DNA of 64,000 nucleotides from Geosiphon pyriformis uo1. Its lineage: Eukaryota; Fungi; Glomeromycota. Positions 35,465 to 64,000 of this stretch are shown one piece after another. Within the stretch, counting starts at the first letter, position 1. Each line of letters starts with the position of its first letter. The notes under the pieces are model-generated. The model was not told where the DNA came from, did no database searches, and was given only the letters and a program-made list of their open reading frames with translations. Where the stretch lies: NCBI GenBank assembly GCA_016748015.1, contig JAAOMT010000009.1, positions 390,459-454,458 of the forward strand, in the 5' to 3' direction. Both the position numbers and the translations under genes were made by a program.

Positions 35465-35518
<54 letters not shown>

Positions 35519-35554
35519 TTTTTTTTTTTTTTTTTGTTTTTTTCTTTTTTTTTT

Positions 35555-35602
<48 letters not shown>

Positions 35603-35628
35603 TTTTTTTTTTTTTTTTTTTTTTTTTT

Positions 35629-36065: not shown

Positions 36066-36625
36066 CCCCCCCCCCCCCCCCAAAAAAAAAAAAATGGTGA
36101 TAAACACTTGTGGCGATGTTCGATTAAAAAATCCCCGCGCCCATTCAAACTCCAAAAATCTTGAATCTTTTAAAATTTTGTTTAAAATGAACATACCACA
36201 GTCAACATTATTCAGCAAAGCCGACTTTTCATATCAACGTCTCAAATATTATCGCCTCACTAAGATTAGCTTGTTTCATTAGATAATAAACCAACATCAT
36301 GTTGAACTGATAAATCATTTTTTATTTCGCAAAAAAATTTTATTAATTTTAAAATGCTATAATTCTTTCATTAATATACTATACCTTGAAAAAAAAAAAA
36401 AAATTGGCCTTTATAAAATTATGATAACGTTATGCGTGTGTTGAATATACAAATTTTGATTTTATACAGAATGGAAATGTGAGAAAAAGGTCTGAATAAA
36501 ACTTGCAAGGAGAAATTAATTTACAAAAACTCTTTCAACTTCTTGTGCAATATTTTTTTGACCCTTTCACATTATGACTGACCCTCCCTCCTCATCCTCC
36601 TTCCAATGTAAAAATTAGCCTTCTA

Positions 36626-44031: not shown

Positions 44032-47000
44032 TCAAGCCCAGATGGACTGAAATTTTGCTTCAAATTCCTCCCTTACAAGTTTAAATCCTTTCAAGACATT
44101 CTCATCGACACCATCCAAGGTATTCAGTGATACACAAATTGCGTTCAAGATGTATGAAAAATCTTTCAAAAATTTCCAAATTTCGCCACCTCTGATCCCG
44201 TTTGCCTCGATCAGTGCCTTTTGCTGGCCATGTAAGAAAAAATCAAAAAGATACGCGTTAAGGTAACGGTCAGTATCTATAAAGGGGACACTACGAGCTT
44301 CCAGGAAAATAGAACTACGCAAATGAGAGGTCAGATCATAAATGTTCCTAAACAGATCCCCTTGGCCACTGCAAATTGCCATAAATGAGGAGCGAGCGAC
44401 ATAGGGAACACATGTGGACTTAAGTTGACTTAATAATTCCCCATTGAGATCGATATATTCAAAAGGAAATCGCATATTTGATAACGGGAGTTTATCGTCT
44501 AATTCGATGATATTCTGAGCAAAAGTAATCACATATGTGGAATAAATCTTGATGACTCGATCATTATGCATATCCAAGATTTGCTGTACTGACGTTGGAA
44601 TTGGATCAAGCACAATTCTTGAAGGATATTTTTTTCTTAATGTTGAAATCCATGCTTTCCCTAGACGTCGTATTGGGATAATATTAAAAAGATTCGAGAG
44701 TACAAGCATAAGCATGTCCATCACGTCTTTTGAGTTCGTTTCCACGTCTCTGCATATTTTGTGCCATACTCCGTGCTTGTAAAGAACGACAAAGGCAAAG
44801 TTACTAGGCTCAGTATAATGTAAATGAGTGACTGCCCCAGCCAAGTTCAGCAATTGGCCGTTTTTATCGAGCAAATTCTCTCGCATTAAATATTGAATAG
44901 AAAAAATAAGATGGTGTTTAATCTGATCTGAGAGATGTTCCCGACCTAAACAGAAAAATGTCTGTCCAAGTAACCCTTTAATTGCTTCCTCAGCATTGAT
45001 AAGATTCTTCGTCTGCGTAAGTAATAGAAAAGAACGAAGCGCTAAAGTTGTTGTCATAGGGAAGCTCCCATTAAGTTTAGGCAAATCGGAAATAAGCAGT
45101 CGTGAAATCTTAGTCCAAGTAAGCCCAAAAAATATAACATTTCCCACAAGATCGAAGCCTCGACGACCACTTCTTCCAGCCATTTGTCTGGAGAAAAACA
45201 ATAAAAGATACGATTAACAAACAATAAACAAGGTCTCAAACATCATAAATAGAGCCTGACAAATACTTGCCTATAATTAAGTGCCGTTAAAAAAACTGAA
45301 TCGCCACAAAAGACGACAGTTTTACATGGCATATTTATACCTAAGGAACAAAATGACGAAATTGTCAAGATTTAATAAATTCAACTTAAGAAACCTTAAA
45401 AATCAATCTGCATTACTTGAACTGTAAAACAGCATAAAATTAATCAAATACCTAACGCAAGCGTTCCAGTTGCTATTACAATACGAACATACTTTTGGCG
45501 GAATAAAATCTCGACTGCTTGAAGGTATTTTTTTGGCATGCCTCCATGATGTACGGCTATACCCCTTTCTAAGGCTCTCAAAAGGAAAATGTTATTTCCT
45601 TTCATTTGCTTTTGAGAATACTTTAGTAAAGCTTCCAATTCTTGTTTGGAGACATTGGATTGTATGTGGGCAAAAGTAAATCTTGGATCATGCTTCTCCC
45701 AATCAAAAATTTCTGGTGAATCTTCAGGAATAGAGGTTTCGTTGTCGTCCCAATTATCACTTTTGCCTCGACCTACTTTTTTCTTCCCTTCTGATCCCTT
45801 TTTTGTCATCTTTTCTTTTGCGTTCGTTCGAGCTATAGCCTCTCGCTTTCGTTTCTGGTAATCCATATCGTTCTCCCGTGTCTGGGTCTCATATAATTCT
45901 AATTTCTCAAGTATTTTTGATGCGAGGTGAATACACCCATGCCGATCAAAATGAAAAAAAATAGCCGGAAGTTTATTCTGACTGTTGAGCTCAGAGGCTA
46001 AGTGAATAATTGAGCATTCGAGAAAATTATTGTCATAAACATTGTGTTTGGCATCAAAATCTTTTTCCTGAATCGCGCTAGCTTCTAATTTTGAAAATTG
46101 TTCATTGATTGGAGATTTAAAATCGTTAATAATTTGTTTGACCGCTGGGATTGTTGAGTCTTCAATGGCCCAAAGTCGAAAATATTCCTTAATCTCCTTC
46201 TCATATTCGTTTGTGTCCGCCTTTCTAATTGGAATCATTTTTCGAAACCAATTATCTGGATTTAGTCGGTTCAGAATTTTACTCTCATTTTTTCCAGATA
46301 TTTGCCTCATTTTGTCGTATAAATTAAGACATTCATCTGGCAGAATCTTCATGTCTTTTGGGAATCCCTTCTTTCGCAACATAATTGGTGACAAGGCAGA
46401 ACATGGATGCACCCGAACAAAAGAATTGGCTACTTCTGGACCAACAGTGGTAAAAGTAGGAAATGGTAAGGAAGGAATATAAGCAAACTTCACTAGCTCC
46501 GAGTACCTCTTGTCAGTTTGTATTAGATGCATTTTTTTCCCTCTCAACTTTTGTGCCTTTTCGATCCAACTACTAAACTCTTCTGGATTACCAACTGTTG
46601 CAGAGAGTGCAAGGATTGGGCATTGAGCAACAAGCAAAAGATGTTCCCAAACAATTCCATTATCAGCTTCCCCTATCGAGTGAATTTCATCAAAGATAAT
46701 TCGCCGAATTTTTGGTACCCAGTCATCTGACCGAATTGGCGATAACATGAGGATTTCAAGCATCTCGGGCACAGTTATAAGAATTTGGCAACAATCGTGA
46801 TTTTCACGGTATTCACGAGTGTAAATTCCCCAATGTGACATTCCAGAATTTTCCGGGTAGTTTTTCTTGAATCTTCCGTAGACCTCAGCAGTAATCTGAT
46901 TGACAAGTGGTTTTGTAGGCGCCACATATACAATTATTCCTGGGAATTCCAAACGAAATAAGAACATCAAAGTTGGCAATTTAAAGTAAATTTGAAATTT

Positions 47001-49672
47001 ATTAATTTACATTTGAAACCGACCATCATCATCCTCTCTAAGAACCTGCTCCATTGCATAAAACGCTATGAATGTTTTGCCTGACGACGTCGGACAACAG
47101 ACTAAAGCGGATTCCTTTCGATCAATAACATTCAATACTTCCACCTGCCAATCGTCAGGTTTAAATGTTTTAACTCTTGAGTCATATACCGAGTTTGTAT
47201 CATGATCCATGGAGTGACCACCATATTTCAACTGAAAACGCGCATCTGACAGGTTAACCGAAAGTTTAATTGATTTCAAAGGAAACTGAAATGAATATGG
47301 AGTTGAAGAATTGCTATTGATGGTACGGAATTCCCGAATTTTCAATGCGGAATTTTCTAGGCCAAGTCGAACCAAAACCTAGTTTTTAATGAAAATATAT
47401 TATTATATATCGATAAATATCTTCAACGCTTGATATTTACCTCATCCAAAATTTCAACAACTTGGCTTGTTAAAATTTCTGAAAATTTGTAGAATATATT
47501 AAACACTTGACGATATATATCTATAGCCTTAGAAAAGTCTGGATTATTTCCATTTGTCTTCATTTCTTCGGCCCACAATTGAAGTTGTAACTGCAAATCT
47601 AAAAGCTGTGCGCCCATCATGGTTGGTGGATGCTTCAACTTCCCAGAGGATCTTATGAACTCTGATAGCCTATTTAATTTGCTTTTGGTAGTTTTTAGAG
47701 TTGAAATTTCTTGGTTAAACTTTTCCATATTTCTTCGAGACTCGGCTTCAGCATTCTCAAGTTCCTTTTTCTTTTTTTCATCACGGATGGCTTGTGCCTT
47801 TTCACTTACTTTGCTTGCTTTTCTAGCTTCTTTTTCTTTCTTTTTTGCCTGTTTTTCAATAACTTTTGTTTCTTTCATGAGGGTTTGGGGGCTCCTAGTT
47901 TCACTTGCGTTGCTTACTAATTTCTTCTTGGAAATACTCCGATCAGTTATGATGAGTTGATTATGCTTGCTCCCCAATGAATCACTGTATCTTTGCATGA
48001 AATATATGTACTTTTGGGTGCTTCTCTGTTTGAATTTACGAGCCGATGCTTCATCCCAAGGTTTGCCCTTAGAAAAGGCTTTCTTTTCCAAAGGTTTGAG
48101 AATGTGCCAATGATAAATTTCAAGAAATTTGAAGTTCCCTTCCAAACCATATAGTCCATAGTCAATATTTTCAACCTTTTCAGGTGCTTTCCTAAGATTC
48201 AGATTCATATCACCGAGATATTTATCAAAGAATGGAAATTGAAACGAGAGAAGGGAAATTTCATCTGTAGGATTGATTATTTGGGCCGCTGATTTAATGA
48301 TTGCCAATGGTTCTTTGATATCATCTGTACTTTGGGAGGACATGGAATTATACGATTGAGACAGGCTTTTAACCATGTTCAACATTAATTTAGCAATTCT
48401 TTCAACTTCTACCGGAAAAACAAGATCGCAATCGGATAAAGCGCAAAGAATTCCAAACAGTCTGGTATCAATGAAGTCACCTATGTTACATTCCAACTGC
48501 AATGAATTCACCACATGTCTCCAATCTTTACCTATCAACAAGTGAGCACATTCTTTGTAAAACTCTTCTAAGAAGCTGATAATTATGGGTGAAGTAGAAT
48601 TTAAGGCCTTTTGAGCGCGTAATTGAAGTGGTAGGTAATCCAAAAGCACGGCATGGTAAACAAAGATTTCGATGATTTTCTGAGGAAACTGCTGCTTTCG
48701 AACAATCGGGATCATTGAAAGAATTATGAAAAACATTCTTTGATTGCCCTTACGTAGCACTTGCTTATAGGATTCATTGGTCAATAACTTAGTAACAAGA
48801 TCCTCTGAGTCCAGGTTTGATGCATGGACTGAAAAATCCTTGCACCAAATTTCCAAAAACTTGGTCATTTCATCTACAAATCTTGGATTTTTAATCATAT
48901 TACCAATCCTGTCAAAAACAAAGGCAAAAACCCGAGAGTCTTGGAAACGTATGCTCGGAATCAAAGCAATCGATATGTCTTTCCTTATACAAAAGAACAT
49001 GAACGCCTGACAGAAGCAACCCAGCCTTACTGAGATATTTTTAATACTATTGGATAAAATTGTATCCTCTGTAAGTAACGATTCTGATGAATAAGAATTT
49101 TCTGTCGTTCCATCGCCCAACAAAACAAACAGTGGTTGCCATGCATCGAGATATTCCTGCCACTCTGTACCCCACCAATTATCAAATTGGAGCAGTTCAA
49201 TAAGCTTGGCTTTTTCCTTTAAATGCTCTATTATAGCGTGTCTAAGCACTAGGAGTTTTGAATTCTCAGCCCATATAACTTTATGTGCTTCGAAAAAGAC
49301 AAGGTTAAAGTTGCAGCTACGGTCCAACAGATTTTTAAGGAATGTCTCAAAAAGAAAAGTGAGCGCAAGGAATTGGCCACCACCCATTGGGTCAGTAACA
49401 TTGAGCCAGTGAGTTTTGGGATCCAAAAAGAAGCTAAATAACAAGCTATCTCCATCGATTATAAATAGCTCACGACCGCCAAAGTCACCCACAAGATCAA
49501 TATAACGAGGGTTTACGTTGCTGTACCATTTATTCAATCGATCACTAAAGGAATTTGCCTCTTGATCTTGCTCTGGCTCTTGCTGTTGCATATTGTAATA
49601 ACTCTGAAACACAGCTTCTTGTATTGGCTTTGGGCTTGCACTCGAGGGAATCTCCTTTGGTAGCCATAAATG
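44032..49672 (-). CDS. DDX60-like Ski2-family DExH RNA helicase with N-terminal PIN-like domain (at least 5 exons)
   Basis: [87 protein letters not shown] and LNAYLFDFF. The start is uncertain (in-frame ATG ~49591, or a missing upstream exon). Confidence 0.9.
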
Positions 49673-49849: not shown

Positions 49850-52800
49850 TTACAAATTTTATAAAACTATTAAAGTAATTTATAAATTTTACAAAATCAT
49901 TAAATAATCTAAAATATTATTATTTATTAACAACTTATTATTTTATTTTATTTAAATAATGTATATTTTTTATTTTTTTATTTTTAACCAAGTTTTTTAT
50001 TAAACTAGCAAATAAACTGCCAAATTTTTTAATTTAAATTTTAAAAAAATATTATATTAAACTTGTTTTTAACAACCAAAAAAATAATATAATTATTAAA
50101 CAACTAATAATTCTATTAACTAAGTTAAATTTTGTATTTAAATCTAAATTAATTATTTAAACATATGTTAAAACAATATTAAATTAATAAATTTATTTTT
50201 TATAATAAATTTATTATTAATTTTTTTTTATTGCTTTATAAATACAACTCAATTATTATTTAATACAATACAACTGTTTAGAATTCTAAATTAAACATAA
50301 TTTACATATTTTCTATATATAATTAACCACTTAGCCAATTAAAACAATATTATACAATTATATTAACAAAAACATTACTATTAATACTAATAAAACACAA
50401 ATAATCAATCTTAAAACCAAAATTTAACAATTTAACTTTTTACTATTCTTAACAAATATGTTACTTTTTTTTAAAAAAAATTCAAAAACTTTTAAACAAA
50501 AATTGGTTTTAATTTAATATTAAAAAATAAATTACTTTTTTCTATTTTTGTTCAAAGTTTTAAATTAGATAACCAAATTTTATTTCTGTAATTACTGATT
50601 AAACTATGTATAAAATTCATTAAATAAGAAATGACCAACTTAATTTCTTTAAAAACAAATATGATCTTAGTTAACTAAAACTTAAACATAAAGTTTTTAC
50701 TAAAATTAAATATAAATTAATATTAAAAATATTAAAATACAAAAACTAAAAAACAAAAAATAATAACAATTATACAATAATTAAAGACATTTAAAGTTTA
50801 GAATAGTCAATTAACAAATTTTTATAAATAAAAAAATCTAAACTACAAACAAAATTATAATCAAAAAATTTTATTTTATCATAATATAAATATAGTAATA
50901 TTTATATAAAGTTTTTTTCTAATTATAATAAACAATCTTTTGCATAAAACTTTTATTATATATGTATACAAACTTATTATAAAGTTGTTAATATATTTAA
51001 TAATTATATGTAAATTAGAATATCAAATTAAAACAGTAATCTTTTATTTAATATTATTAATATATAAAAAATTTATAACATTAATTCTAAAATCTACTTT
51101 TTATAAAATATATTAAACTATATTGTTTATTAATCCAATAAAGATATATATATTTTTAAAAATAATTTTATTATTACAACTACAATTTTTTTTTAAATAT
51201 TAACTAATAATATTATATTAAAAAAAAGTTTAATCTGTTAATATATTAATATACTTATTATTTAAAATATTAAAATATTTTTTTATTTTTAATTATTTTA
51301 CAAAAATATTCTTATTATAAATAATATTAACAATATAATAATATTTTATTCAATATTTATTATAAAAATTTGATATAACTATTTTCAATTTAGCTTAATA
51401 AATATTTAAAGTAATTTGACTATTTATATAAATTATAATACTAGTAAATATTATAACATAAAATAAACTAAATTTTTGAATAATTTATTTACAAAAATTG
51501 TAATCTTAAACAAATAAATATTTCTTAAATCAAAATATATTTTTCAAATTTAATATATTTATTTTGAATAACAAACTAGATATTTATAAACAATTTTTAG
51601 TTAGATTATTAACAATAATAAATATTTATTATTATTAAGTATTTTTTTATTTTTAAGTTTAATTCTTAAAAAAAATTTTGGTTTTATTAAAATTAATTGA
51701 TATATTTTTACAATATTAATAAAAATTTTTTTTTTTCTATGTTCAAAATTTCCCAAAGTATTTTTTTTCAAAAAAAAGGTTTTTTATAGTCTAGTTAAAA
51801 GTTTTTGTTGATAATATCAAGCATTTTAATAATAAAAAAATATTTTTTAGGTCAAATTTGGTTTTGAAAATAGTATTTATTCAGATATAAATAATAAGTT
51901 TAGTAATAATAAAAGTGATAATATTTTAATAAATGCTAATAATAGTTTTTTTTTGGTTCAACAATAATAACTTTTAAAACTAAAAAAGTTAATACTAGTT
52001 TAAAGTATAATTTTTTTATTGATTTAATTAACTATGATATAAATAAAAATAAAAAACTCTTTTTTTTTTTTAATATTTCTTTAAACAAAAAATAGATTGA
52101 TCTTAAAATAATGAAAACTTAAGTTAAAATAACTATTAAAAATTTTTTTGCTTTGAATATCAATTTATTAACAATTAAAAATAAATTAACAATAACAAAA
52201 ATACAGATCATTAAAAAAATTTTCTCAAAAATAAATGATTTTGAGAGAATTATTACTTTTTTAATATTTAAAAAGATTATTAAATTTAAATTTACATCTG
52301 AAAAAAATATAAAACAAGCAATTTTATTAACAAATAATAACAAAATTATAGTAAATAGTAATAATAAAAAATAAAAAATTTATATAAATATGTTTAAAAA
52401 AAAGATTATCTTAACTTTATTTAAATTTGGCTAAATTGTATTAATCTAATTATAACTTATTAATTTATGACAAAAAATTATAATAGAATTTACTAAATTA
52501 AATCAGATAAATAATTTTATAGTAAAATAATATGTTTTAATTAAAAAAGACATAGTATATATAACCAAAACTATTTTAAATCAAATTATTTAAATATTCA
52601 AATATTAATTTAAATTATTATTATTTATTTTGCTTATAAAAACTATAGTTTATAATTTAAGTAATTTATTAAATAGAATAGATAAAAAACCTTGTGTAAT
52701 TAATTAGTTTTGGTCATTAATTCTATGTTATACTATGTAACAATAAGTTTTAAATTAGAAAAAAAACTCGAAATATGCTTTTTATATTATTTTAATCTTT

Positions 52801-55800
52801 AATAATATCAAATTCTTATAGGTTAAATCGAATTTGGTTTGCTATAATAAATGTAATTACTTTGATTACTTAGCTTTAGAATATAATTAGATTAACACTT
52901 TTCAATTTCTAATGCAAAAACCAAACAAATTATCAATTTTTAAGAAAAAACATATATAATTTGTCTAATTTTATATTAAAAAACAAGTTTTTGTCTTTTG
53001 TTTACTAACTTTTAGTGATTTGTTTTAAGCTTAAGTAGTTGGCAACAATACAATTTACTTTTTATTAAGTGTAAATTTTCATGATAATACTAGTTTTAAT
53101 ATTTAGTTAGTTTTGTTTCTTCTATTTTTTTATTTTTAAATTTTTAATTATATATACTTGAACAGTTATTAGAACTATTAAATAATCAAATTTTCAAAGT
53201 TTTTACCAAATTAAATATTTTAATTAAGTTTTCAATGTTTTTAGTCTCTTAATCTTAATTTTTTTAAATTTACTTATTAGTAATATAATTAGTCTTAAAA
53301 TAAGTTTATTAAATACATTTTTTCTACTTATTAGTCCAATAGTTGGCAATATTTTATAGTTTTCTTTAAATAACAATAAGTTTTTACAACTAAAATTAGA
53401 ATCTAAAATTTAAATTATTAGCTTTAAATAGTTTTGTTAGTATGATTTTAGCTTAGTTAAATCTATTGGTTTTTAATAATGATTTTTTAATTTTTAATTT
53501 TTTTTAATAACTGGTTATATTTAAAAAATTGCTATGTATAATGTTTGTAAGATTAATAATTCTGTTAAATTAGCAAATATGATTTGTTGACACAAAAAAA
53601 TACTATATTTAATTTTAATACTTTTAGAAACTAAGTTATAGGCCAAGTTTGATCATAAATTGTAAATAAGTTTAATAATATTAATTTTAATTATATAAGC
53701 TTTGATATTATAATTATATTAAACAATGATTTAATTATGCATATATACAAAGTCTTAAAAATAACTAATTAATTTTTATGTATTTTTTTAGAAGATATTT
53801 GTTAATTTTTACTTTAAATTTATATGTTAAAATCATATTAAATAAATAGTTGCTTTATACTAATAAAATCAATTTTTTAATTATTATTGCTATAAAAAAT
53901 AGCTTTTTTGTAATTTTAAATAAAAATTTTAATAAAAATAGTACTGACCATAATACAAGTTTCAAAAAGCTTAAAATTTTGAATTTATTTGATTTTCTAA
54001 TGAATTCTTTTTTTTGTAGTTATTTTATATAATTGAATTTTAAAAAAGTTAAGAAATATATAAACTTTATTTTAGTAAATAAAAACTTTTATAATTTTTT
54101 AATTAAGCATAGCATTTATTAACTTAATAAATTTTTTGTATTTAATTATAGTACTGTATTTGTAAAAATGAGTTTAAAGAATTTGATTAATTTTTAATTG
54201 AATTTTATATATAAATAAACAAATAAAAATAGGTAAAAATATTAAATTAATAGTATTAATAGCAAGATTTAAAACAGTTTTAAGGTTTTTTTTGGGTTTT
54301 GTATTATAAAATATATATATTTTTAATAGATATAAAGTTACAGATAATATTAATAATATATGGTTTTTATTATTACTAATAATTTTTTTGTTATTAATAA
54401 AATACTTTTAAAAACTTGATATAAAATAAAAAATATAATTAAAAATGCTACTTTTTTCAAATTTTATAAGTTGGAGTTACTTGTTTTTAAGATTTTGTAT
54501 TTATTTAAGTCTAATAAAAATAGGCAGTCTTAAGTTGTTACTAAAAAATTAAACAAAGTTAAATATTATAAAGACTATAAAATTTTAAGAGTTTTTTAAT
54601 AATAATCTTAACAATATTAAAGTTAAATATGTTGTCTTAATTTAGGAAAATTTATTATGATTTCAAAATATTTAAAGCTAAATCTGCTAAAAACAATTAT
54701 ATCTTTAATATAATTATAAAATAAATAAACAACTTTGCCAACAATAAAAAGTAAATAATTTGTAATATTTTAGAATATCTATTTAAAAAAATTATGTTAA
54801 ATTACTTGATAAAAAACAAAAAACTTATTTTAGAATCTGATTTGATTAAATACAAAATAGATTTTATTATAAAAGAATAGACTAAAAAGCATATGGTTAA
54901 AAAAATAACTTTTTTAATTTGATATTACCAATAAAAATCTCTTATTTATATTTAAAATAATGCTTTTTTTAGTATTATAAAGAGAATTAATTTAAAAAAA
55001 TTTAGAAAAATAATTGAGTTTCTTTTAAATAACAAAGCAATTAAACTTTCTGAAATTTTTAATAAATTGTAAAAACATAATAATTTTTTTATGTAAAACA
55101 TGCTTTTTATATTAATTAATAAGTATTTAATATTAGAAATGGTTTTTGATACATAGAAAAAAGTTAGATTTTGATAATTCTAAAGTTCTATAAATAAAAA
55201 AAGATTTGAATTAATATTTATTCTATTGTCTTGATAAAAACTATAAGAAAAATTTTCTTCAAAATATTAATAGATTATATTTTAAGTATATATAATAAGT
55301 ATAATGTTTTAAAAAAAAATAATTTTTTGGTTTTAACAAGTATTTTAACTTTTTGTTGTAGACTTAACAATTGAGAATATTTTGAAAAAAAACAAAAAAA
55401 TTTGATTAATATATTAAAACATAAAAAAAACTTATAATTTAATGAACTGACTATATTTATAAAAAAGCTTGTTGAGAATAAAAATGTGCTTAAAGTTTAT
55501 TAAATTTTTTGGTTATATTCACAATAGTTGTACCAACAGAATAATAATAAATTTTGGTTTAATTAATAAATATGCAGTTTATAATAACCTAAATTAAGAC
55601 AAGATGTTTTTTTTTATGTGAAGAATTTTTTATAATCTACTTCTATATAAAATCTGAAAGCATAAAACTTTTTTTGATTATAAAATTGATTCTAAATATG
55701 TGATTAAGACTGATAAAATAAAATTTAGTGTAAAATTTATATTATTTTTGGCAACATATGTTTTTATCAACAATAGAATTTGGATTAAATATAGCTATTT

Positions 55801-58800
55801 AGCTATATAAAACATTTTAAATATTGTTAATGAATTTTTTGATATCAATAATGTGACTATTAATTTAAACAAAACTATTAATATACTTATTAATATAAAA
55901 ACTTTAAAAATTAATCTGGTTGTTAATAATACTGCTTTCTTAACTATAAAATTTAATATGTCTTATAAATATCTAAAAATTTATATATATTTTTAATGAA
56001 TTTTTTAGTACTTAACTTAAAAAAAACCAGTTTTAATGTAAAATTTTTTTGGTAATGGTTTTTTAAAAAACAATTTTAGATAAATAATTTGTGTATTTAA
56101 TTTTTATTCTGTATTTTATTTTGTGCTATAGAATATAATTTAGTTTTGTTAAAAGTTTATATGCTAAATAAAACCTAATATTTAAATAAAATTTGAAGTT
56201 TAAAGCTGGCTAATTAAAAATTTTTTCAAGTAACATAATGTATTATTTTTTATTTTACAATCTAAAATTTTTCAATCAAGCTTAAATTAAGAATAAGATA
56301 ACTTTTGCTGTTTATTTTATTAATATTAATAATATTCTAAAGAATTTTTTAAACATAAAACTATAAATTTGCAAATTATTATTTGAATATTATATAGTTT
56401 GCTTTTATTTTTTGTCAAATTATTGATTAATTTTTTGAACAATTTTTTGACAAATATTATTAATTTTTTTTTGGTTTATATGTTGTTATTTTTTATTTGT
56501 ATTCTTAATGTTTTTAAATATTATTATAGTTCTTTTGTTTTAAATATTTTGGATATTACTAAGTATTTTAAGATTATTAAATATTTAAAGTATTTTAAAA
56601 TAATTTTTACTAGACAATTTTTAAATAGTTATAAGAAATGTTTTTTTTAAAAGAATTTTTAACATTAAAAACATTTGAATTTAAGAAGTTCTATTCTTTT
56701 TGGGTTTTTTTAATGTTTAAGTTTATACTTTTAGAAAGTTTTATAAATTTTGGCTTATTTTTTTAGGTTTTTTTTGGTTAATGTATTGAGTTTGCTAGGT
56801 TTTTTTGGTATTAAGTCTATCTTAAAATTTAATAACTTGAGTGTTTTATTAGTTTTTACAAATAGTTTTGTCAATATTTTTAACTTATTTTTTGTTGCTA
56901 ATAGTACTATAATATATTTTTTAATTTAAATTCAAGCATAAGTATATAAATAGATAGTTTTTTTCTTAATTTTGGCTAAATTAATAACTATTGTTTTAAT
57001 TTTTAAGTATATTCCTTTTTTTTTTATGTAAAAATTTTTTAAACAGTATTACTAAAGGTTTTTGGTTTCTTTTCTTGAATATTGTTACTGTCTATTTGTT
57101 GTGAATTTACGTTTTTTGGAAGCTAGTAAATCTCTAATAACTGAATTTATTTTCAAATTATCTCTTTTAATTTAAACTGTTAAGCTTATAAATAGAATGG
57201 CCAATTCTGTACCAGTTACTTTATGTAGTTATATTATAGTAAATATTAACTCTTTCTCAGGAATTGCTTATTTGAAAGTTCACTAAAATGTGTAGTTACT
57301 TTGCTGTAAAAGTTAATTTTTTTACAAAAATCTCATCTGTAGACTACTTTAATAAATATAATAAAAAAATAAAAGAAAATAAAAGAAATATACAAGAAAT
57401 AAAATATTGTCAAAAGAATAATTTTTTATCCAGGTCTGAAATTACTAATAGTTTATTGAAATTGGTAACTAATTAATTTCAAAATATTAGTTGAATTTTG
57501 AGAATTGCAAGTATAATAATTAAAAATTTTAGATTTTTGAATGTTTGATTTTTATTTGATTTGTAAAAATAATTCTAAAAAAAATAAATCTAAAATAAGA
57601 TATCTATAGTAAGATATATTTTCTTGAAGAGAGAAATTTTTCTTTTATACAACTTGTTGTAATATTAGTCTATGAACTTAAACTTTCTTTTTTGCTATAA
57701 TTTTAATGAACTAAAGATACATTTCAGTAAACTACAAGTTATTTCAATAAACTATTAATTATTTTGGAGAATTATTTATTATTTCAGCAAATTTTTACAA
57801 ATTTTGACAAATTCTTAAATGTTAAATAATTTAGAGTATTGTGTAATTTGATCATCTTAATTTCTATAGTACAAATTGAGTTATTAATTAAATAATAATA
57901 TTCAATAATTTGATTAACTAATAAGTGATAATTGAAGTAATAATAATATATGCTAGTTAATAATAAAAATTATAAGAATAATTTTATGTTAATTACTAGC
58001 TAAAATTCTACTGATAATAACAGTTAAATTGTTATTAATGCTTATTATTCTAAGCTGTAGTTATTAAAGCTCAATCTTAGAAATAGTTGTTAAATAAAAT
58101 ATTAATATATTGTCAATATTATTTATAATAGAAATTTGTCTGTTAAATAAATAAAAGTAAAAAGATATTTAAGAGTTTTAGTAATAAATATGCTAATATT
58201 TTAATAAATTTTACAACTTATTTTGGCTTGATATTTTCTATTAATATGTCTAAAACTATGTAATAACTAGTAAAAAAACTGTTTGGACAATATTTGTTAT
58301 TTTGTTAAATTTTTGAGTAATTCTGTTTAATAAGTTTTATAAAAAATAAGTTTTAGTATAGATATAATAAATTTTTTAAATATTAATAACATTAATTAAG
58401 AAATTATAGTCTTGGTTTAATATTCTAACTTATATATAGTAGTTAATTTTATTAGCAAATTTATAGTTAGTTTATATATCTATATTATAAAAATTTTATA
58501 TTATAAACTACTAATAATTATTAGAAAAAAACTTTATAATAAATACTATTCTAGTGTTTTCTATATATATTATAATAAAGATAAATTTTTTAATTATATT
58601 TTTGCTTATTAAAAAAACTAATTAGTATAGTATAACTTTTTGGCTATATATTTATTTTAGTGGTATTTTTTGTTTATACTAATTTGTTTTTATTATTATT
58701 CTCTAAGACTTGGTTTTAAATGTTTTTAATATAATTTTGTATATGGTTTTATATAAAAATTTTGTGTTCAAATCTTGGATACCTAATATTAAAAATTTTT

Positions 58801-60390
58801 TTGATTGTATTTCAAGTAAAGTGGTTTTTTTGCTTAATATTAAAAAGAGTTATATAGTTTGCTTTAAAAAATAGTTTTGTTATTTGTTTTTTATTGCTGT
58901 AAATAATATAATAAGTATTGTAATTTTTGTATAATATAGTTTGAATTAACCAAATAGCTGATTATATGTAGTTAATATATAAGCTATATTTAATTTAAAA
59001 CTCTAAATAGTTATATTGTATTAAATTATAATTAAATTGTACTCATTAAATAATAATAATAATAAAACTTAATACAAAACTTTTAAATTTTTAATTTATT
59101 ATTATTATTATTATTATATAATAAAAAATTGATAAATTAAATATTAATATAAAAAAAATAACAATAAAAAAAATTGTTAAATCTGAATATAATATAAAAT
59201 ATTATTTTAAAGTTATATATTTTTTGGTTAATAAAATATTTGTTAAATATATTTAAAAAATTTAATAATATTTTTAATAAGAATTTTTCTAAATTTTATA
59301 TATTAAAATTTTAATTTTAAACATATTTAAATTATTAAAATTAAGATTTAATAATTAACTTATTTTTAATAAATTATTAGTTATTTTTTGATAATATTAA
59401 GATTAAATTTGTTTTATTTAAAATAAAAAAATTATATTATATATCTATAAAATTAAAAAGTTAAAAATTAAGTTTGTTATTATTAAATAAATAAAAAATT
59501 TTACTGTTAATAAGAATTATAATATTAAAAATATATTAGAATAGTTATTTTACAAAGTAATTCTAAATTACTTGGTTGTAAAAAATAAGTTGGTTTTAAA
59601 TTTTGTTGAAATCAAGTTAAAAATAAATATAATTATAAAAAATTAAACAAAAAAAAACAGTTTTGAATAATATTCTTAATTTGTAATATTATTAATATTT
59701 ATTTTATATTAATGATAATATTTTTTTAATAATAATAAGCACAAAAAATTATAATTAAATATATAGTATAGTTAAAAAATTTTTAAATAAAAAAACTGTT
59801 AATTTATTTAATATTACCAATAAACTTTAAAAGTATTATAATAAATTTAGTCTAAAAATGTTTTTAAATCTATTAAATTCTATTTATTATATAATTTAAT
59901 TTTTTATCTTTTGAAAAAAAGCTTTAAAATTTATAATTTCTAAATTTTATAAATAAAAAAAAGTTTTAATTAACAACAAACTAATTATTTTAATTAAAAC
60001 TATTTAAAAAGTTTTTATAAAAATTTTTTTATAGATTTTTTTTGGTTTATAGCAAATTTAATGTTTTTTATAGTGATAATTTTTTTGTTTTAAAAAATAT
60101 TTTAATTCAATTTTTTATTTTTGTAATAAGTTTAATAATAAAAAATATATTAAAAAAAAATTATAATTTTTAACTAGTTTTTTAAAATATGTAAAAAATT
60201 TACAATTTAATTAATTAATACTATTAATAAACAGTTTAACTAAAATTAAAATATGCAAAAAATTTAAAAATTTTTTTGTAATATTTATAATAATAAAATA
60301 TAAATAAATATAAAATACATAATAGTCTGAATTAGTATAATTTTTTTTTCTATTACTTTAAAAAAAAATTTAATTATTTATAAATAAAAA
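49850..60390. other. Extremely AT-rich block of hypermutated transposon remnants
   Basis: Abrupt G/C loss. For example 1 G/C in 60 nt at 59101-59160 and 8 in 60 at 52081-52140. Confidence 0.9.
51740..58900 (+). mobile_element. Full-length non-LTR retrotransposon (LINE) ghost: ORF1, APE, RT, RNase H and CCHC, erased by C>T/G>A transitions
   Basis: Colinear with 60518-64000 (52081 aligns with 60902, 53520 with 62392, 55030 with 63930). Back-mutable motifs: FINN from FVDD at ~55763, YLKI from YLGI at ~55970, *IKVKRYLR from WxKVKGHSG at 58148, and YIYY..NYIFAY from CxxC..DHxFxC at 58562. Confidence 0.85.
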
Positions 60391-63300
60391 ACTTCTTTCT
60401 CTCCTACCTCTAAAAATCTTTAAAAAAGCACATTTTCTGAAAAAGAAGTTTTTTATTTTTATTTTTTTTTTTTTTGTTAGTTTTTTCAACATTTCTTTAA
60501 ACAACAACCCCTTTGTCATGGATTTGAAGGCTGCTTTGAGCAGTGATATGTTGAAAAAAAAGGCACCTAAAGGTACTTTCTATGGTCCTGCTAGTGGTTT
60601 TTTTGCTCAGAAAAAAAAGATGGTTCTTGGCAATGTTAAACATTCTGATAATGAAAAAAATATCTCTTTGAGTAAATCTGAGTCTGATAATAGTGTGTAC
60701 TCTGATGTGGATAGTCTGTCTGGTAATGATGAGAATGTTGGCATGACAGGTGTGTATAGAGAGTCTCTTTTGGGTTCAGCTGCAACCATTCTCAAGGTGA
60801 AACATGTAAATACTAGTACAATGTTTGGCTTTCTGTTTGGCTTTCCTGATTTCACTATAGATAATAATGAAATTGTGCTTCCCCCTCACTTGCCTATTTC
60901 TCTGGAAAAAAAGTGGATTGATCCAAAGATTATTAAGACTCTTGTAAAAGTGTCAGTTAAAAAGTTATTCACTTTAGATATTAATCTCTTAGCTGTGGAA
61001 GGAAAATCTGCAATGGCAAAAACTCAGTTAATTAGAAAATTTTTTTCACCAGTCAATGATTTCGGGAGGGCCATTACTCCTTTAAAATTTGAAGGAATCA
61101 TCTGATCTACCTTTACTTCCAAAAAAAAATGAATATGGCTGCATCTTTGGCCAGGAAAAGAGAGATTGTCATAAACACTAATCTTAAGAAATCAAAAGTG
61201 CATTCAGATTGGGCCATAGTAATCAAAAAAATTCCCATGGATACACCTAAGGAAATGATCGTCACCGCAGTCGCCAAATTTGGTGATATTAAATCAATCA
61301 AGATTCAGTTAATTGGTATGTGGCGGAAGGCTGTGGTGGAATTCACTGATTTGAGTCAAGCCAATTTGTTAGCGTCAAGATGGTCATTCCTGATCAGGAA
61401 AGACTCAGTGCGTATGGCAAAAGCTGTGGGAAATCATAATATCTGGGCATCAAAAGACTGTTTTAGGACAATTTTGTTTACTTTGCCAGTGGAAACAACT
61501 GCACACAATCTTGGTACTCTTTTGGATGGGGCTGGCAATAAGACTTGTATCATCAATCAATTTTTGAACACTGGCAATAGGTTTTGTTGTGCTGTGATTG
61601 GCTTTGAATCTGAAAAGAATTTGGATTCAACATTTTGCACTGAACCTGTTTTTAGTGATGTGTGGCTCTTATAGGCTAGATTGGATTTGGTTTGGTATGG
61701 GAAATGTGGGTGTTTTAGGCATTCAGCTCTTGAGTGTGATGCTCCAATTGGTTCTATGTTATTGTTATCTTTGGTTAAGTCTTTTAAAAGTTTTGTTTCT
61801 GAGGAGAGGCATCTCCAGCTGGCCAAGTTATATAAAAAAAAAGAGGTTTTTATCTCCCACCCTGTTGCTTTTGGTGAAAAATTCTGGGCCCAAATGGTCT
61901 TAGCAGCTTCTTTTCTCTCTCATGGTTTTCCTGCTGGTCCCAGCTCAAATCTTCTTTCTTCTTCTTATCATGACATTGGTGATGTTTCTTCTTTGAATGA
62001 ATGCTTGGCCTCATTGAAATGCTCACTTGAGCTTCTTTTTGACTGGGTGTCCACTATTGTTAGATGTCTTGATAGTACTGAATTGGTGTCTTTGGTGTCT
62101 TCCTCTTTTGTTTCTTCTCCTAATGCTTCTGTATCTTTGGCTTCGGGTTTAGGCTCAGATATGGTTTTGGATGGCACTTCAATACTGTCTGCTCCCTCTT
62201 CTTCTACTGTTGATGTTGATGTACATGTTCTCAGTTCTAGTAGCTCCAGAATTCCCACTGGCAAAGTGGGTGGCTTGGAGTCTAAGTTGGCATCTTTGGA
62301 GACTTCTATTGATTTAGTGTTAACACGTTTGGATGGCTTGTGCTCTAGTTTGAATGCTCCTTTGTATTCTCTTTCCAAATGAATAACCTAGTTTGGAAGT
62401 TCGCTATGTGTAATGTTCAGGGTCTCAATGTTCCAGCCAAATGGGCAGACATTGTTTGTTAACATGTAAGCTTTGGAAGTATGGTTTTTTTTGTTACTGA
62501 GATGAAGTTGAGGCCTTCCTCTGGACCATAGATCAAGGATGAATTTGAGGGGGTCCAGATTTTTACTTCTGGTTTGGATGTTGGTTATCTCAGTACTAGT
62601 GTTGCTGTGATTATAAACAATTCTTTGGCTCACCATGTTTCTAAGGTTGAGGTGGTCTCTGGTCATGTTATCTTGGTGCATCTTCTGTTCAAGAGCAAGC
62701 TTTCAGTGACTGTGCTTGGTTTGTATGCTGGTGCCTCTTCTAGCATTCGTTTTGGACAGGCATTTAAGGTTAATTCTCTTATTGCTAAGGCTGTTAATAC
62801 CAGCAATTTTGTTGTTTTGAGTGAGGATTTTAATGAAAATGGGTCTGGGAAGAGCGTGAGTTTCAGGTTTTGTCTGGGTTTTGGTCTGGTCAATTCATTT
62901 GCCAGTCATCAGTTGGCATTGGCTCCTACGTGGTGCAACTTGAGAGGGATCAAAAAGACTATTGATTATATTTTAGTTAGTGAAAGTCTGTTATTCACTG
63001 TTGCTATGCATTGGGTTGAGTCAGTTTCAGATTTTTTTGACACGGATCATAGTGCTGTCATGGTGTTAGTAGGTCTGGGTGGGCTTTTGGATGTTCAATT
63101 AAATAGCTTGCACAGGCAGACTAACAAAGATTGTTAGAAGTTCAAGATTAAGGATGTAGATGTGTTCAAGTGGGATAAGTTTAGGGATTGTGTTTTGGTA
63201 AGGCTTTTGTTGGTCAAAGGCATCTTTGCTGATGTCAAAGCTGGTGGTAATTTGGATACTATGTGGGCAATTTTGGAAAAGGAGATGGTTGAGTCTGCTG

Positions 63301-64000
63301 ATAAAATTTTTTCCAGACTGTGGTTTAGCAAATTTTATTGCTTTAGGAACAAACATTTTTCAAAGTTCTTTGGATTGGGGTTGCTCATTGTAAAGATTCT
63401 TGGTGTGGTCCACTCTGGCAACATGCTTGAAGTTGTCTGTCTCATAAAAAAATGGTCCACTTTGGATGAGGACAAAGCTTGCGCATTCTCTAATTTGGTT
63501 AGATTGGATGAGGATAGTGGGATTCTTCTTAAGCATCTGTTTTTGTTTTGCAAGGAATACAGAAAATCAAAAATGTTTGAATCGAGACTAGCTGAGGAGG
63601 CTTTTGTTAAAAAGGCTATAGAAAAATGCATGGAAAGTTTCACTTTCAATAAAAAGTGCATGATCAAAAGTATTTTGGATCGGCCTTTTTGCAAGGTGGT
63701 ACTTGATCATTTGGTGGTTGATAAAAGCTTGGTTTTGGTATCTGCGGAGGTGAAGTCTAAAATAGATAAGATTATGGCAGGATAGACAAGGAAGCAAGTG
63801 ATACCTATGGTGATGTCTGATCTTTGGGCTTGCCAATATGTGCTTTTAGATTATGTGTGGAACAATGCTTTTTCTGAGGTAATATGTGAAATCAGTTTGG
63901 ATGAGCTGCTCTCAGTGGTTAATGATCTTCCTGATGACAAGGCTGCTGATTTGTCTGGCATTCCTAATGAATTGTGGAAACATAGTGGTGATATGGTATT
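60391..64000 (+). mobile_element. LINE retrotransposon, 5' part (ORF1 and APE-containing ORF2), inactivated; runs off the window
   Basis: ORF1 60518-62382 has an RRM-like region and a degenerate knuckle YxxCx4Hx4C. ORF2 from ATG 62379 has APE motifs CNVQG, TEMK, GLYA, EDFNE, TIDYI and DTDH. In-frame stops and a frameshift are present. Confidence 0.92.

What the first reader, a model, noticed from the sequence alone, without database searches (positions are those of the whole stretch)
51740..58900. A whole LINE erased by C>T/G>A transitions: candidate RIP-like genome defence in a non-Dikarya fungus
Seen: 52081-52281 aligns without a gap for 67 codons to 60902-61102. Most first- and second-position differences are G>A or C>T in the old copy (TGG>TAG, GTG>ATA, GCA>ACA, GCC>ATT, CCT>TTT, GAA>AAA). 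G+C is 8/60 in line 52081 versus 18/60 in line 60901. RT, RNase H and CCHC motifs reappear when A>G and T>C are reversed (AGA TAT TTA AGA from GGA CAT TCA GGA). Both strands are hit, contexts are not limited to CpG, and indels are few, unlike slow neutral decay. Established: RIP (RID-dependent, CpA>TpA) is known from filamentous ascomycetes, with RIP-like CpG signatures in some basidiomycetes. To my knowledge it is not established in Glomeromycotina. Inference: a repeat-targeted cytosine hypermutation mechanism, either RIP-like or dense non-CpG methylation with deamination, acts in this genome.
Basis: partly seen in the sequence, partly recalled or inferred. Interest (0 to 1): 0.9.

Follow-up and report, generated by a model that had tools for sequence, protein, structure and literature searches.

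The report
Transposons erased by C-to-T hypermutation
In the fungus Geosiphon pyriformis, a relative of the arbuscular mycorrhizal fungi, inserted transposon copies are riddled and finally erased by almost pure C-to-T changes on both DNA strands; this resembles a genome defence (RIP) so far documented only in ascomycetes and some basidiomycetes.

Summary
Window 51798-58778 is a colinear relic (GC about 14%) of a 6.85 kb LINE. It carries a nested solo LTR at 57049-57992 and has two more LINE relics beside it.

At columns conserved across all four LINE subfamilies, the relic has lost 62% of its C/G by C>T or G>A, equally on both strands and in every sequence context.

The strongest evidence comes from 24 "young" copies (GC 37-41%):
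- Each already has 11-17% of C/G converted.
- Transversions are almost absent (within-subfamily ts/tv 23-55).
- Each carries 0-13 stop codons (only one has none) and 0-5 indels.
- The changes are neutral with respect to coding.
- The inferred subfamily ancestors are open, with GC3 of 0.45.

Further support:
- The two LTRs of one retrotransposon differ at 26 sites, all transitions, so the process acts after integration.
- A duplicated methyltransferase gene pair of similar divergence shows ordinary ts/tv of 2.4.
- Non-repeat intergenic DNA has about 28% GC, so this is not the genome-wide mutation spectrum.

The organism is Geosiphon pyriformis (Glomeromycotina). The context preference is CpG > TpC > other, not CpA. 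I found no strand-coordinated runs and could not confirm a RID homologue.

I read this as RIP-like in outcome, not shown to be canonical RIP. The scan's first readers noted similar relics on two other pieces of this genome.

The parts
50213..51460 (-). LINE relic i: the 3' part of the element (matches L034:7281-8491), reverse orientation, GC about 11.5%
   Evidence: BLAST with transitions collapsed gives 654-690 bits against 81 for the reversed control. Composite RIP index +0.32.
51798..57023 (+).
   Evidence: Colinear with L034:1920-7260. At family-conserved columns: C/G>T/A 62.5%, C/G transversions 13.5%, A/T transversions 12.7%, A/T>G/C transitions 3.4%.
57049..57992 (.). Solo LTR (TG..CA, about 945 bp) of an LTR retrotransposon, nested in relic ii and itself half erased (GC 19%)
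   Evidence: 78% identical to five copies with GC of 27-30% (L006, L009, L016, L021, L024). 49% of its C/G are converted to T/A.
58018..58778 (+). LINE relic ii, 3' part (RNase H and CCHC region); may run on to about 59100
   Evidence: Aligns to L034:7280-8048, score 121-129 against 23-24 for the control. The mutated KGHSG codons lie at 58163.
59485..60299 (+). LINE relic iii (RT region), GC about 9%, the most heavily converted piece
   Evidence: Score 214 against 27 for the control. C/G>T/A is 74.7%, yet transversions are fewer than in relic ii (8.6% at C/G sites, 9.4% at A/T sites).
60359..64000 (+). Young LINE copy, GC 37-38%; runs past the window end to about 67200 in window coordinates (L031:1359-8200)
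   Evidence: 85% identical to subfamily relatives. 17% of conserved C/G converted and 7 in-frame stops.

Best explanation
Geosiphon pyriformis has a process that converts cytosine to thymine in integrated transposon copies. It acts on double-stranded genomic DNA after insertion. It hits both strands equally, the whole length of the element, and all sequence contexts, with the preference CpG > TpC > CpC > the rest.

It quickly fills a copy with nonsense and missense changes while leaving it almost free of indels and transversions. Continued or repeated action drives the copy towards 9-15% GC. Ordinary slow AT-biased decay then adds transversions. Window 49.7-60.5 kb shows the end state: three LINE relics and a half-erased solo LTR. 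The copy starting at 60359 shows the early state.

Shown: the direction of change, the strand symmetry, the contexts, the action after integration, the absence of selection on the changes, and the contrast with a gene duplicate and with the active LINE lineages.

Inferred: the target is recognised as a silenced or methylated transposon, and the chemistry is deamination of cytosine or 5-methylcytosine linked to a C5-methyltransferase-family enzyme. The genome encodes one DNMT1 with an RFD domain, two BAH+DNMT genes with no detected RFD domain, and a pair of stand-alone prokaryote-like DNMTs shared with Ambispora.

It works like RIP in outcome, but it is not shown to be canonical RID-dependent, premeiotic, duplication-sensing RIP.
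For: 1. Private changes in 21 copies of three of the four subfamilies (A, B, D): C>T 7-10% per C/G site, against T>C 0.3-0.8% and each transversion class 0.02-0.3%.

2. Pairwise comparison with no ancestral inference: transitions 9.6-12% per site against transversions 0.17-0.5%, so ts/tv is 23-55 within a subfamily. Between subfamilies it is 3.0 for copies and about 1.7 for the inferred ancestors.

3. The inferred ancestors have 0-1 stops in about 1000 codons. 23 of 24 copies have 3-13 stops and 0-5 indel events. Genome-wide, 42 of the 43 best ORF2 matches carry in-frame stops (96 TGA, 95 TAG, 28 TAA), and most of them span the ORF full length in a single frame.

4. C>T and G>A are equal in every copy. 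There is no 5'-3' gradient. The ratio of nonsynonymous to synonymous hits is 0.88-1.28 of the neutral expectation.

5. The two LTRs of one element, identical at integration, differ at 26 sites with no transversion; 19 polarise as C>T or G>A.

6. The ratio of C>T to transversions falls from about 70-110 in young copies to about 9-17 in the relics. Relic iii has more C>T but fewer transversions than relic ii. A constant genome-wide clock cannot give this.

7. Controls: the DNMT gene paralogues have ts/tv of 2.4 and unchanged GC. Intergenic 43000-44100 has about 28% GC, and the window's GC distribution is bimodal. The ancestors' GC3 is 0.45.

8. At least 37% of the 34 kb of AT-rich DNA in hand is recognisable as relics of the few TE families available to me.
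Against: - The sample is small: one LINE family, one LTR family and about 250 kb of a 128 Mb genome. No DNA transposon could be tested.
- There is only one non-TE duplicate as a control, and it is a gene under selection.
- C>T and G>A hits are not strand-coordinated (mean z -0.44). This fits scattered spontaneous deamination of 5mC as well as it fits an enzyme.
- There is no CpA preference.
- No methylation data exist here for non-CpG sites. The only arbuscular mycorrhizal fungus (AMF) methylome I found measured CpG alone (PMC8647823).
- No deaminase candidate was found, but the control genomes did not ring either, so those searches are uninformative.
- The raw-read check of the base calls could not be run.
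Confidence: 0.72

Rival explanations
1. Canonical RIP. Duplicated DNA is sensed by homology in a premeiotic dikaryotic stage and deaminated by a RID/Masc1-type methyltransferase homologue, as in Neurospora.
For: - The outcome is the same: transition-only damage, stops without frameshifts, AT-rich relics with a positive composite RIP index (+0.19 to +0.45).
- All sampled copies of four subfamilies sit at a similar 85-91% pairwise identity, as a homology-limited process would leave them.
- A catalytic-domain-only DNMT with intact motifs I, IV, VI, VIII, IX and X exists in two copies.
Against: - There is no CpA>TpA preference; CpA 0.09-0.11 equals CpT.
- There are no strand-coordinated runs.
- A linked gene duplicate of about 1.1 kb at 90% identity, 32 kb from its partner, is not hypermutated.
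- The stand-alone DNMT has no close relative except in Ambispora. Its more distant relatives include a cyanobacterial DNA methyltransferase, and no RID was available to compare it with.
- No sexual cycle is known.
- A less damaged LINE subfamily with 1-3 stops per copy exists, so the similar loads may reflect which copies were sampled.
Confidence: 0.12
2. Editing coupled to retrotransposition. An APOBEC-like deaminase or an error-prone reverse transcriptase with skewed dNTP pools mutates the RNA or cDNA intermediate, so each new insertion is born mutated.
For: - Both affected families are retroelements.
- TpC is the preferred non-CpG context (0.14-0.17 against 0.07-0.10), reminiscent of APOBEC3 enzymes.
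- Every copy carries its own private set of hits.
Against: - C>T and G>A are equal in each of the 21 copies of subfamilies A, B and D examined, whereas cDNA editing is strand-specific.
- There is no gradient along the element.
- The two LTRs of one integrated element have diverged by 26 transitions and no transversion.
- The relics reach 62-75% conversion, and the nested, younger LTR has less than its host. Damage therefore keeps accumulating in place.
Confidence: 0.07
3. Ordinary neutral decay. The genome-wide mutation spectrum is simply very AT-biased, and the relic is just an old copy at compositional equilibrium.
For: - The relic carries 10-14% AT-ward transversions, so it really is old.
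- The equilibrium GC predicted from the copies' spectrum (4-8%) matches the GC of the AT-rich blocks (6-15%).
Against: - The ratio of C>T to transversions is not constant across ages: about 70-110 in young copies against about 9-17 in relics. Relic iii is more converted than relic ii yet has fewer transversions.
- The gene paralogue pair has 1.9% transversions but no GC loss and ts/tv of 2.4.
- The LINE master lineages diverged by 6-10% transversions while keeping 45% GC and GC3 of 0.45.
- Non-repeat intergenic DNA has about 28% GC, and the GC distribution is bimodal.
Confidence: 0.05
4. Artefact. Assembly, polishing or DNA-damage errors create false C>T differences between repeat copies.
Against: - Damage or polishing errors would not spare neighbouring genes (the 389, 511 and 729 aa open frames of the helicase gene at 44032-49612) or a gene paralogue pair.
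- They would not produce 10 kb blocks at 9-15% GC.
- They would not reproduce the same context hierarchy in three subfamilies.
- Contigs from other public runs, one of them from a different study, hold the neighbouring gene region 44000-48000; the relics themselves were not checked.
Confidence: 0.02

Closest known systems
Repeat-induced point mutation (RIP) of Neurospora crassa and other Pezizomycotina (RID-dependent, with a second DIM-2-dependent pathway)
   Same: - C>T and G>A transitions only, acting on integrated repeated elements.
- Copies are killed by nonsense mutations with few indels.
- The end products are AT-rich blocks with TpA/ApT above 0.89 and a positive composite index.
   Different: - The context is CpG > TpC > other instead of CpA.
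- There are no strand-coordinated runs.
- A linked gene duplicate was spared.
- The host is a glomeromycete with no known sexual stage.
- No RID orthologue was demonstrated.
- A kingdom-wide k-mer screen found such signatures only in ascomycetes (PMC12543289).
RIP-like hypermutation at TpCpG/CpG in Pucciniomycotina and other basidiomycetes (e.g. Microbotryum; from my own knowledge and the reference list of PMC11105155)
   Same: It targets TE copies, CpG is the hottest site, and a 5' T raises the rate.
   Different: Here more than 95% of the hits are outside CpG, and TCG is no hotter than other NCG sites (0.28-0.32 for all).
Deamination of 5-methylcytosine in methylated transposons (the mutational decay of methylated TEs known from animals and plants; CpG methylation of TEs in Rhizophagus irregularis, PMC8647823)
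   Same: - It is TE-specific, strand-symmetric, scattered and post-integrative.
- CpG is the most mutable site.
- The LINE ancestors are already CpG-depleted (observed/expected 0.43-0.60).
   Different: It would need dense methylation of cytosines in all contexts, which has not been measured in any glomeromycete. The ratio of C>T to transversions (70-110) is at or above what I recall for methylated mammalian CpG (about 40; own knowledge, not computed here).
APOBEC3-type restriction of retroelements
   Same: A TpC preference and heavy C-to-T load on retroelements.
   Different: Both strands are hit equally, LTR pairs diverge after integration, and no APOBEC-like domain was found, although that search was uninformative.
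Composite-index hint of RIP in Zoophthora radicans (Entomophthorales), eLife 2024 (PMC11105155)
   Same: A claim of RIP-like activity outside Dikarya.
   Different: That claim rests on window composition indices only. Here the mutations are read directly from polarised alignments of copies, with controls.

Membership tests
RIP (canonical, Neurospora type) | Mutations in repeated DNA are almost exclusively C:G to T:A transitions | tested here: met
   Within-subfamily ts/tv is 23-55. Private C>T is 12-26 times T>C per site. The LTR pair differs by 26 transitions and no transversion.
RIP (canonical, Neurospora type) | Strong CpA>TpA dinucleotide preference | tested here: not met
   CpA 0.085-0.113, CpT 0.071-0.115, CpC 0.12-0.13, CpG 0.29-0.34; the 5' neighbour T gives 0.14-0.17.
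RIP (canonical, Neurospora type) | Acts on any duplicated sequence above a length and identity threshold, including gene duplicates, especially linked ones | tested here: inconclusive
   The single non-TE duplicate available (DNMT paralogues, about 1.1 kb, 90% identity, 32 kb apart) shows ts/tv of 2.4 and no GC loss. With n=1 and a gene under selection, this is only suggestive.
RIP (canonical, Neurospora type) | Individual events mutate one strand at a time, giving runs of C>T or of G>A | tested here: not met
   Runs test on 24 copies: mean z -0.44, combined z -2.2. Many superimposed rounds could blur such runs.
RIP (canonical, Neurospora type) | Requires RID/Masc1 (or DIM-2 for the second pathway) | tested here: inconclusive
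   PF00145 hits at seven places. By domain content they include one DNMT1 with RFD, two BAH+DNMT loci with no RFD hit, and two stand-alone DNMT copies; two further loci (C646, C692) were left unclassified. None could be assigned to the RID or DIM-2 clade.
RIP (canonical, Neurospora type) | Occurs in the premeiotic dikaryotic phase of the sexual cycle | not testable with these tools
   This needs crosses or staged material. No sexual cycle is described for Geosiphon.
RIP (canonical, Neurospora type) | Relics have TpA/ApT above 0.89, (CpA+TpG)/(ApC+GpT) below 1.03 and composite index above 0 | tested here: met
   Relics: product index 1.07-1.14, substrate index 0.69-1.00, composite index +0.07 to +0.45. 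Young copies, genes and intergenic DNA: composite index -0.6 to -1.0.
Methylation-driven decay of TEs (5mC deamination) | Hits concentrated at the methylated context | tested here: inconclusive
   CpG is about 3 times hotter than other contexts, but more than 95% of hits are non-CpG. Non-CpG methylation is unmeasured.
Methylation-driven decay of TEs (5mC deamination) | Target DNA is cytosine-methylated | not testable with these tools
   No methylation calls are available. This needs bisulfite or EM-seq data, or raw nanopore or PacBio signal.
Non-LTR retrotransposon (LINE) with APE endonuclease, RT, RNase H and a CCHC-type zinc-finger motif | RT and endonuclease domains, an RNase H motif set and a C-terminal CCHC | tested here: met
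   Pfam RVT_1 at E 3e-6 and Exo_endo_phos_2 at E 1e-3, both below Pfam's gathering scores. By eye: YTDGS...ELQA...LDSQAA...KGHSG..N..AD motifs and CX2CX7HX3C in L031, L032 and L034.

The most novel reading that the evidence does not exclude
A genuine homology-dependent RIP system exists in Glomeromycotina. It evolved independently of, or predates, the Dikarya RID system, and is perhaps run by the Archaeosporales-specific stand-alone C5-methyltransferase (G9A89_012587 and its paralogue). If it acts premeiotically, its fresh traces would be a molecular footprint of a cryptic sexual or parasexual cycle in a lineage long regarded as asexual.
Probability: 0.15. Interest if true: 0.93.

Novelty: new variant of a known kind. 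Interest (0 to 1): 0.78.

Why it matters
**RIP-type hypermutation is currently held to be restricted.**
- A 2025 screen of 1,239 fungal genomes concluded that such signatures are unique to ascomycetes (PMC12543289).
- The literature on arbuscular mycorrhizal fungi (AMF) states that no RIP signature has been detected (PMC8647823).
- A 2025 survey of AMF transposons that included Geosiphon does not consider RIP at all (PMC11952901).

**What direct, polarised alignments show here.** In Geosiphon, transposons are inactivated and then erased by a cytosine-specific process with a different context signature.

**If this holds genome-wide, it has five consequences.**
1. It adds a third layer of genome defence in Glomeromycotina, beside CpG methylation and RNAi.
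2. It explains the AT-rich deserts and the low overall GC content.
3. Kimura-distance "ages" of AMF transposons would be strongly overestimated. This would help explain why Geosiphon shows no "recent" TE peak.
4. It gives a tractable question about cryptic sex in AMF.
5. Screens based on composition or on CpA can miss such systems. Here the young copies, with 11-17% of C/G converted, still have a negative RIP index.

Tried and rejected
- **More genomic copies.** Fetching DNA transposons, short fragments and intermediate-GC relics failed.
- **Raw-read check.** The base calls were therefore not checked against raw reads. 
- **First global alignment.** It collapsed to a trivial solution. The first relaxed blastn was swamped by AT-rich flank matches. 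Both were replaced by a transition-tolerant local aligner and by BLAST on transition-collapsed sequences, each with reversed-sequence controls.
- **Strand-coordinated runs.** None were found.
- **5'-3' gradient.** None was found.
- **Kinetics from L031 and L022.** Their extra transversions come with matching extra T>C changes, so they reflect sub-lineage divergence and say nothing about kinetics.
- **L034's open 1077-codon ORF2.** I asked whether selection kept it open. The nonsynonymous to synonymous ratio of its hits is neutral (0.94). With context-adjusted expectations of about 6 stops, one stop-free copy among 24 has roughly a 6% chance. I treat it as chance.
- **Other AT-rich blocks.** 33101-34400, 35301-36100 and 39501-40600 could not be tied to any TE in hand. 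Their scores equal the controls, and 35301-36100 looks like simple sequence.
- **Deaminase searches.** OTT_1508 and APOBEC_N gave no hits, but OTT_1508 rang in none of the control genomes and APOBEC_N rang in one only, below its cut-off. This is not evidence of absence.
- **BAH+DNMT genes.** They could not be assigned to DIM-2 or DNMT1 from single exons.
- **Genome papers.** The original Geosiphon genome paper is not held, so I cannot exclude that it, or the 2024 metagenome paper, mentions RIP.


Full report
**1. The observation**

The best shifted register gives 83, and the best of 2000 shuffles gives 85. Of the 69 differences, 40 are G>A or C>T towards the AT-rich copy, 5 are the reverse transitions and 24 are transversions. 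The details check out: 8/60 against 18/60 G+C, TGG>TAG, and AGATATTTAAGA at 58163, where younger copies encode the RNase H motif KGHSG.

The window's GC profile shows a 10.8 kb block (49.7-60.5 kb) at 8-19% GC, against 25-41% elsewhere. The distribution of 200-bp windows is bimodal, with modes near 0.12-0.15 and 0.30-0.36.

**2. Anatomy**

The GC-normal partner at 60359 onward is the 5' part of a 6.85 kb non-LTR retrotransposon. The reference copy is L034:1670-8513.
- Pfam gives weak RVT_1 and endonuclease matches.
- RNase H motifs and a CX2CX7HX3C knuckle are readable in translation.
- The family has thousands of candidate matches in the 128 Mb genome.

A transition-tolerant alignment places window 51798-57023 on L034:1920-7260 and 58018-58778 on L034:7280-8048. 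Scores are 1042, 54-68 and 121-129, against 23-30 for reversed controls.

The gap between the two pieces is a 945-bp solo LTR (TG..CA) at 57049-57992. It belongs to a family with five copies of 27-30% GC in my loci.

BLAST on sequences with transitions collapsed shows two more relics of the same LINE:
- 50213-51460: the 3' part of the element, minus strand, 654-690 bits against 81 for the control.
- 59485-60299: the RT region, plus strand, 771 bits against 87 for the control.

**3. Spectrum in the relic**

I aligned 30 copies (L005-L034). 24 of them fall into four subfamilies (A-D) that are 70-76% identical to each other. I then scored the relic only at the 2,809 columns where the inferred ancestors of at least three subfamilies agree.

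| Change in the relic | Fraction of ancestral sites |
|---|---|
| C>T | 58% |
| G>A | 65% |
| C>A / G>T | 11-14% |
| A<->T | 10-12% |
| T>C / A>G | 3-4% |
| Other classes | about 1.5% |

All sixteen trinucleotide contexts are affected, at 43-83%. Three conclusions follow:
- The loss of G+C is overwhelmingly by transition, on both strands, and is not limited to CpG.
- The relic has also aged, because it carries transversions.
- At most 58 gap events occur in 4.7 kb. In the full pairwise alignment to L034 (6,209 columns) there are about 2,500 substitutions.

**4. The decisive evidence is in the "young" copies**

*Private changes.* These are sites where a copy differs and all its subfamily relatives agree. 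They are nearly all C>T or G>A. For example, L033 has 74 against 4 of all other kinds, and L015 has 61 against 1. Per site, C>T is 7-10%, T>C is 0.3-0.8%, and each transversion class is 0.02-0.3%.

*Pairwise comparison.* Without any ancestral inference, differences within a subfamily are 9.6-12% transitions and 0.17-0.5% transversions (ts/tv 23-55). The subfamily ancestors differ from each other with ts/tv of about 1.7.

*Direction of change.* The inferred ancestors have 0-1 in-frame stops in about 1000 ORF2 codons. 23 of 24 copies have 3-13 stops and only 0-5 indel events.

*Genome-wide.* 42 of the 43 best ORF2 matches carry in-frame stops (96 TGA, 95 TAG, 28 TAA), and most of them span the ORF in one frame. 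These are the stops that single C>T or G>A changes create from TGG, CGA, CAG and CAA.

*Nature of the hits.*
- They are equal on the two strands in every copy.
- They are uniform along the element.
- They are neutral with respect to coding: the nonsynonymous to synonymous ratio is 0.88-1.28 of expectation.
- They are over-dispersed among sites.

*Context.* CpG 0.29-0.34 > TpC 0.14-0.17 > CpC about 0.12-0.13 > the rest at 0.05-0.10. This order is the same in three subfamilies. CpA is not preferred.

*Strand runs.* C>T and G>A hits are not grouped into strand-coherent runs (mean z -0.44).

**5. The process acts after integration and is not confined to LINEs**

Loci L009 and L021 hold the two LTRs of one LTR retrotransposon that sits inside a LINE copy on contig C564. 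The two LTRs are 97% identical and differ at 26 sites. All 26 are transitions, and 19 polarise as C>T or G>A. LTRs are identical at integration, so these changes arose in chromosomal DNA.

Other copies of the LTR carry 19-23% conversion with 2-4 transversions (one copy, L006, belongs to a divergent LTR subfamily and has 40). The window's solo LTR carries 49%. That is less than its host relic, as expected for a later insertion.

**6. It is not the genome-wide spectrum**

Four observations argue against a genome-wide spectrum.

(a) *Gene paralogue control.* The copies' spectrum predicts an equilibrium GC of 4-8%. Two paralogous methyltransferase genes, 32 kb apart and 90% identical over about 1.1 kb, differ by 40 transitions and 17 transversions, in both directions, with equal GC. 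They have about ten times the transversion divergence of the young LINE copies and none of the C>T excess.

(b) *Intergenic DNA.* The non-repeat stretch 43000-44100 has about 28% GC.

(c) *Active LINE lineages.* They diverged by 6-10% transversions while keeping 44-46% GC and GC3 of 0.45.

(d) *Changing ratio.* All pieces were measured through one pipeline at family-conserved columns.

| Piece | C/G>T/A | A/T transversions |
|---|---|---|
| Young copies | 0.11-0.17 | 0.000-0.006 |
| Relic ii | 0.625 | 0.127 |
| Relic iii | 0.747 | 0.094 |

Converted to rates, C>T relative to transversions is about 70-110 in young copies and about 9-17 in the relics. The more converted relic has the fewer transversions. 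A single constant clock would have removed essentially every cytosine by the time 5-10% transversions had accumulated, yet 17-24% of the ancestral C/G remain. The C>T process is therefore intense early and slows or stops later, and its dose varies between copies. This step is inference from the counts.

**7. Extent**

Of the 34 kb of DNA below 17% GC in the window and loci, at least 37% is recognisable as relics of the handful of TE families for which I hold GC-normal copies.

A search with the relic itself finds many other AT-rich fragments, 69-80% identical, across the genome.

Classical RIP indices are positive in the relics (composite index +0.07 to +0.45). They are negative in the young copies, the genes and the intergenic DNA. 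Composition screens would therefore see only the end state.

**8. Organism and candidate enzymes**

The window ORF at 40750-41538 is a Tad2/TadA-type tRNA adenosine deaminase, an ordinary housekeeping gene. It is identical to G9A89_016958 of Geosiphon pyriformis, on a contig of 2,355,860 bases, which is the length of C701. Geosiphon belongs to Glomeromycotina, order Archaeosporales.

The genome has C5-methyltransferase domains at seven places. Two of them (C646, C692) were left unclassified. The others are:
- One DNMT1 with an RFD domain (C371).
- Two loci with BAH domains upstream of the catalytic domain and no RFD hit (C702, C666). Their class (DNMT1 paralogue or DIM-2-like) could not be settled from single exons.
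- A stand-alone enzyme of about 360 aa in two copies on C657, with motifs I, IV, VI, VIII, IX and X. Its annotated protein is G9A89_012587. Its only close relative is in Ambispora leptoticha (56% identity). More distant relatives include a cyanobacterial DNA methyltransferase.

Searches for OTT_1508-like and APOBEC-like deaminases found nothing. OTT_1508 rang in no control genome and APOBEC_N rang in one only, below its cut-off, so those blanks carry no weight.

**9. Mechanism**

*Best reading.* Integrated transposon copies are recognised, most likely as silenced or methylated chromatin, and their cytosines are deaminated on both strands in all contexts, fastest at CpG and TpC. This kills a copy by nonsense and missense changes long before ordinary mutation would. 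Repeated or prolonged exposure drives it to about 10-15% GC. Slow AT-biased decay then adds transversions.

*What the data do not tell.*
- Whether the deamination is enzyme-catalysed in bursts (RIP proper) or is spontaneous decay of dense 5mC.
- Whether recognition depends on sequence duplication.

Features that lean away from canonical RIP: the lack of strand-coordinated runs, the CpG maximum and the spared gene duplicate. Features shared with RIP: the all-context spectrum, the very high ratio of transitions to transversions, the unequal dose between relics, and stops without frameshifts.

*Rivals that I consider largely excluded.*
- Editing during retrotransposition: excluded by the strand symmetry, the LTR pair and the continued accumulation.
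- Genome-wide drift: excluded by section 6.
- Artefact: the neighbouring genes and the gene paralogues are clean.

**10. Literature**

- RIP signatures are reported as "not detected" in AMF (PMC8647823, citing work on Gigaspora).
- A 1,239-genome k-mer screen found repeat-directed signatures only in ascomycetes (PMC12543289).
- A 2025 AMF transposon survey that includes Geosiphon does not mention RIP, and notes that Geosiphonaceae lack recent TE peaks (PMC11952901).
- The Geosiphon genome paper itself is not in the library, so prior mention there cannot be excluded.
- First readers of this scan noted similar relics on two other pieces of this genome, and an "early stage" in the young copy of this window. 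I confirm the early stage but not its proposed CpA preference.

**11. Limits**

- Only retroelements were tested.
- There is only one non-TE duplicate as a control.
- No methylation data are available.
- No raw-read confirmation was possible. 
- The per-column ancestral states were used only inside scripts to polarise changes in this fungal LINE. No reconstructed sequence is given.

**12. Verdict**

I class the finding as a new variant of a known kind: RIP-like hypermutation in a new phylum-level lineage, with a different context signature.

Noticed in passing
L034:3837-7067 (G000:C659:637596-640826): This is the only one of the 43 best ORF2 matches in the genome with an uninterrupted 1077-codon frame. 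It nevertheless carries the same C>T load as its dead relatives (220 of 1334 C/G sites), and the ratio of nonsynonymous to synonymous hits is neutral. I judge this to be chance (roughly 6% across the 24 copies), but it may be worth checking for expression.
   Followed up: partly
L037:987-2314 and L039 (G000:C657:788 kb and 821 kb): A pair of stand-alone, prokaryote-like C5 DNA methyltransferase genes 32 kb apart (G9A89_012587 and its paralogue). The only close relative is in Ambispora leptoticha. The annotated 540-aa model appears to skip the exon piece encoding motif X (GNAVSPPLA), which is present in the DNA.
   Followed up: partly
L009:511-1470 and L021:2719-3678 (G000:C564, about 10 kb apart): An LTR retrotransposon is inserted into a LINE copy at about L034 position 4062-4091. 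Its two LTRs are 97% identical and differ only by transitions.
   Followed up: yes
window 40750-41538 (+): A Tad2/TadA-type tRNA adenosine deaminase gene (G9A89_016958). It is a housekeeping enzyme and not a candidate DNA deaminase. It lies directly beside an AT-rich block (39501-40600).
   Followed up: partly
window 44032-49612 (-): A large helicase gene in three long open frames of 389, 511 and 729 aa, with a DDX60-type PIN-like domain and a DEAD/ResIII domain. Also seen: a SWIRM-domain gene at 41852-42856 (-) and a Sel1-repeat gene at 31799-32803 (-). All have normal GC and no sign of hypermutation.
   Followed up: no
window 35301-36100: This stretch has 8% GC yet shows open frames of 216-290 codons on both strands, which suggests a simple or low-complexity repeat rather than a TE relic. 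It resembles a stretch at about window 5670-5830.
   Followed up: no
window 33101-34400 and 39501-40600: AT-rich blocks (14-16% GC) with a negative composite RIP index and no detectable relation to any TE in hand. Their origin is unexplained.
   Followed up: partly
G000, table (e.g. C667:715325-718555, C600:335889-339119, C633:586630-589860): A further LINE subfamily (62-64% amino-acid identity to L034 ORF2) has full-length single-frame copies with only 1-3 stops, so it is less damaged. It would be the best material for studying the earliest stage.
   Followed up: no
   Followed up: no
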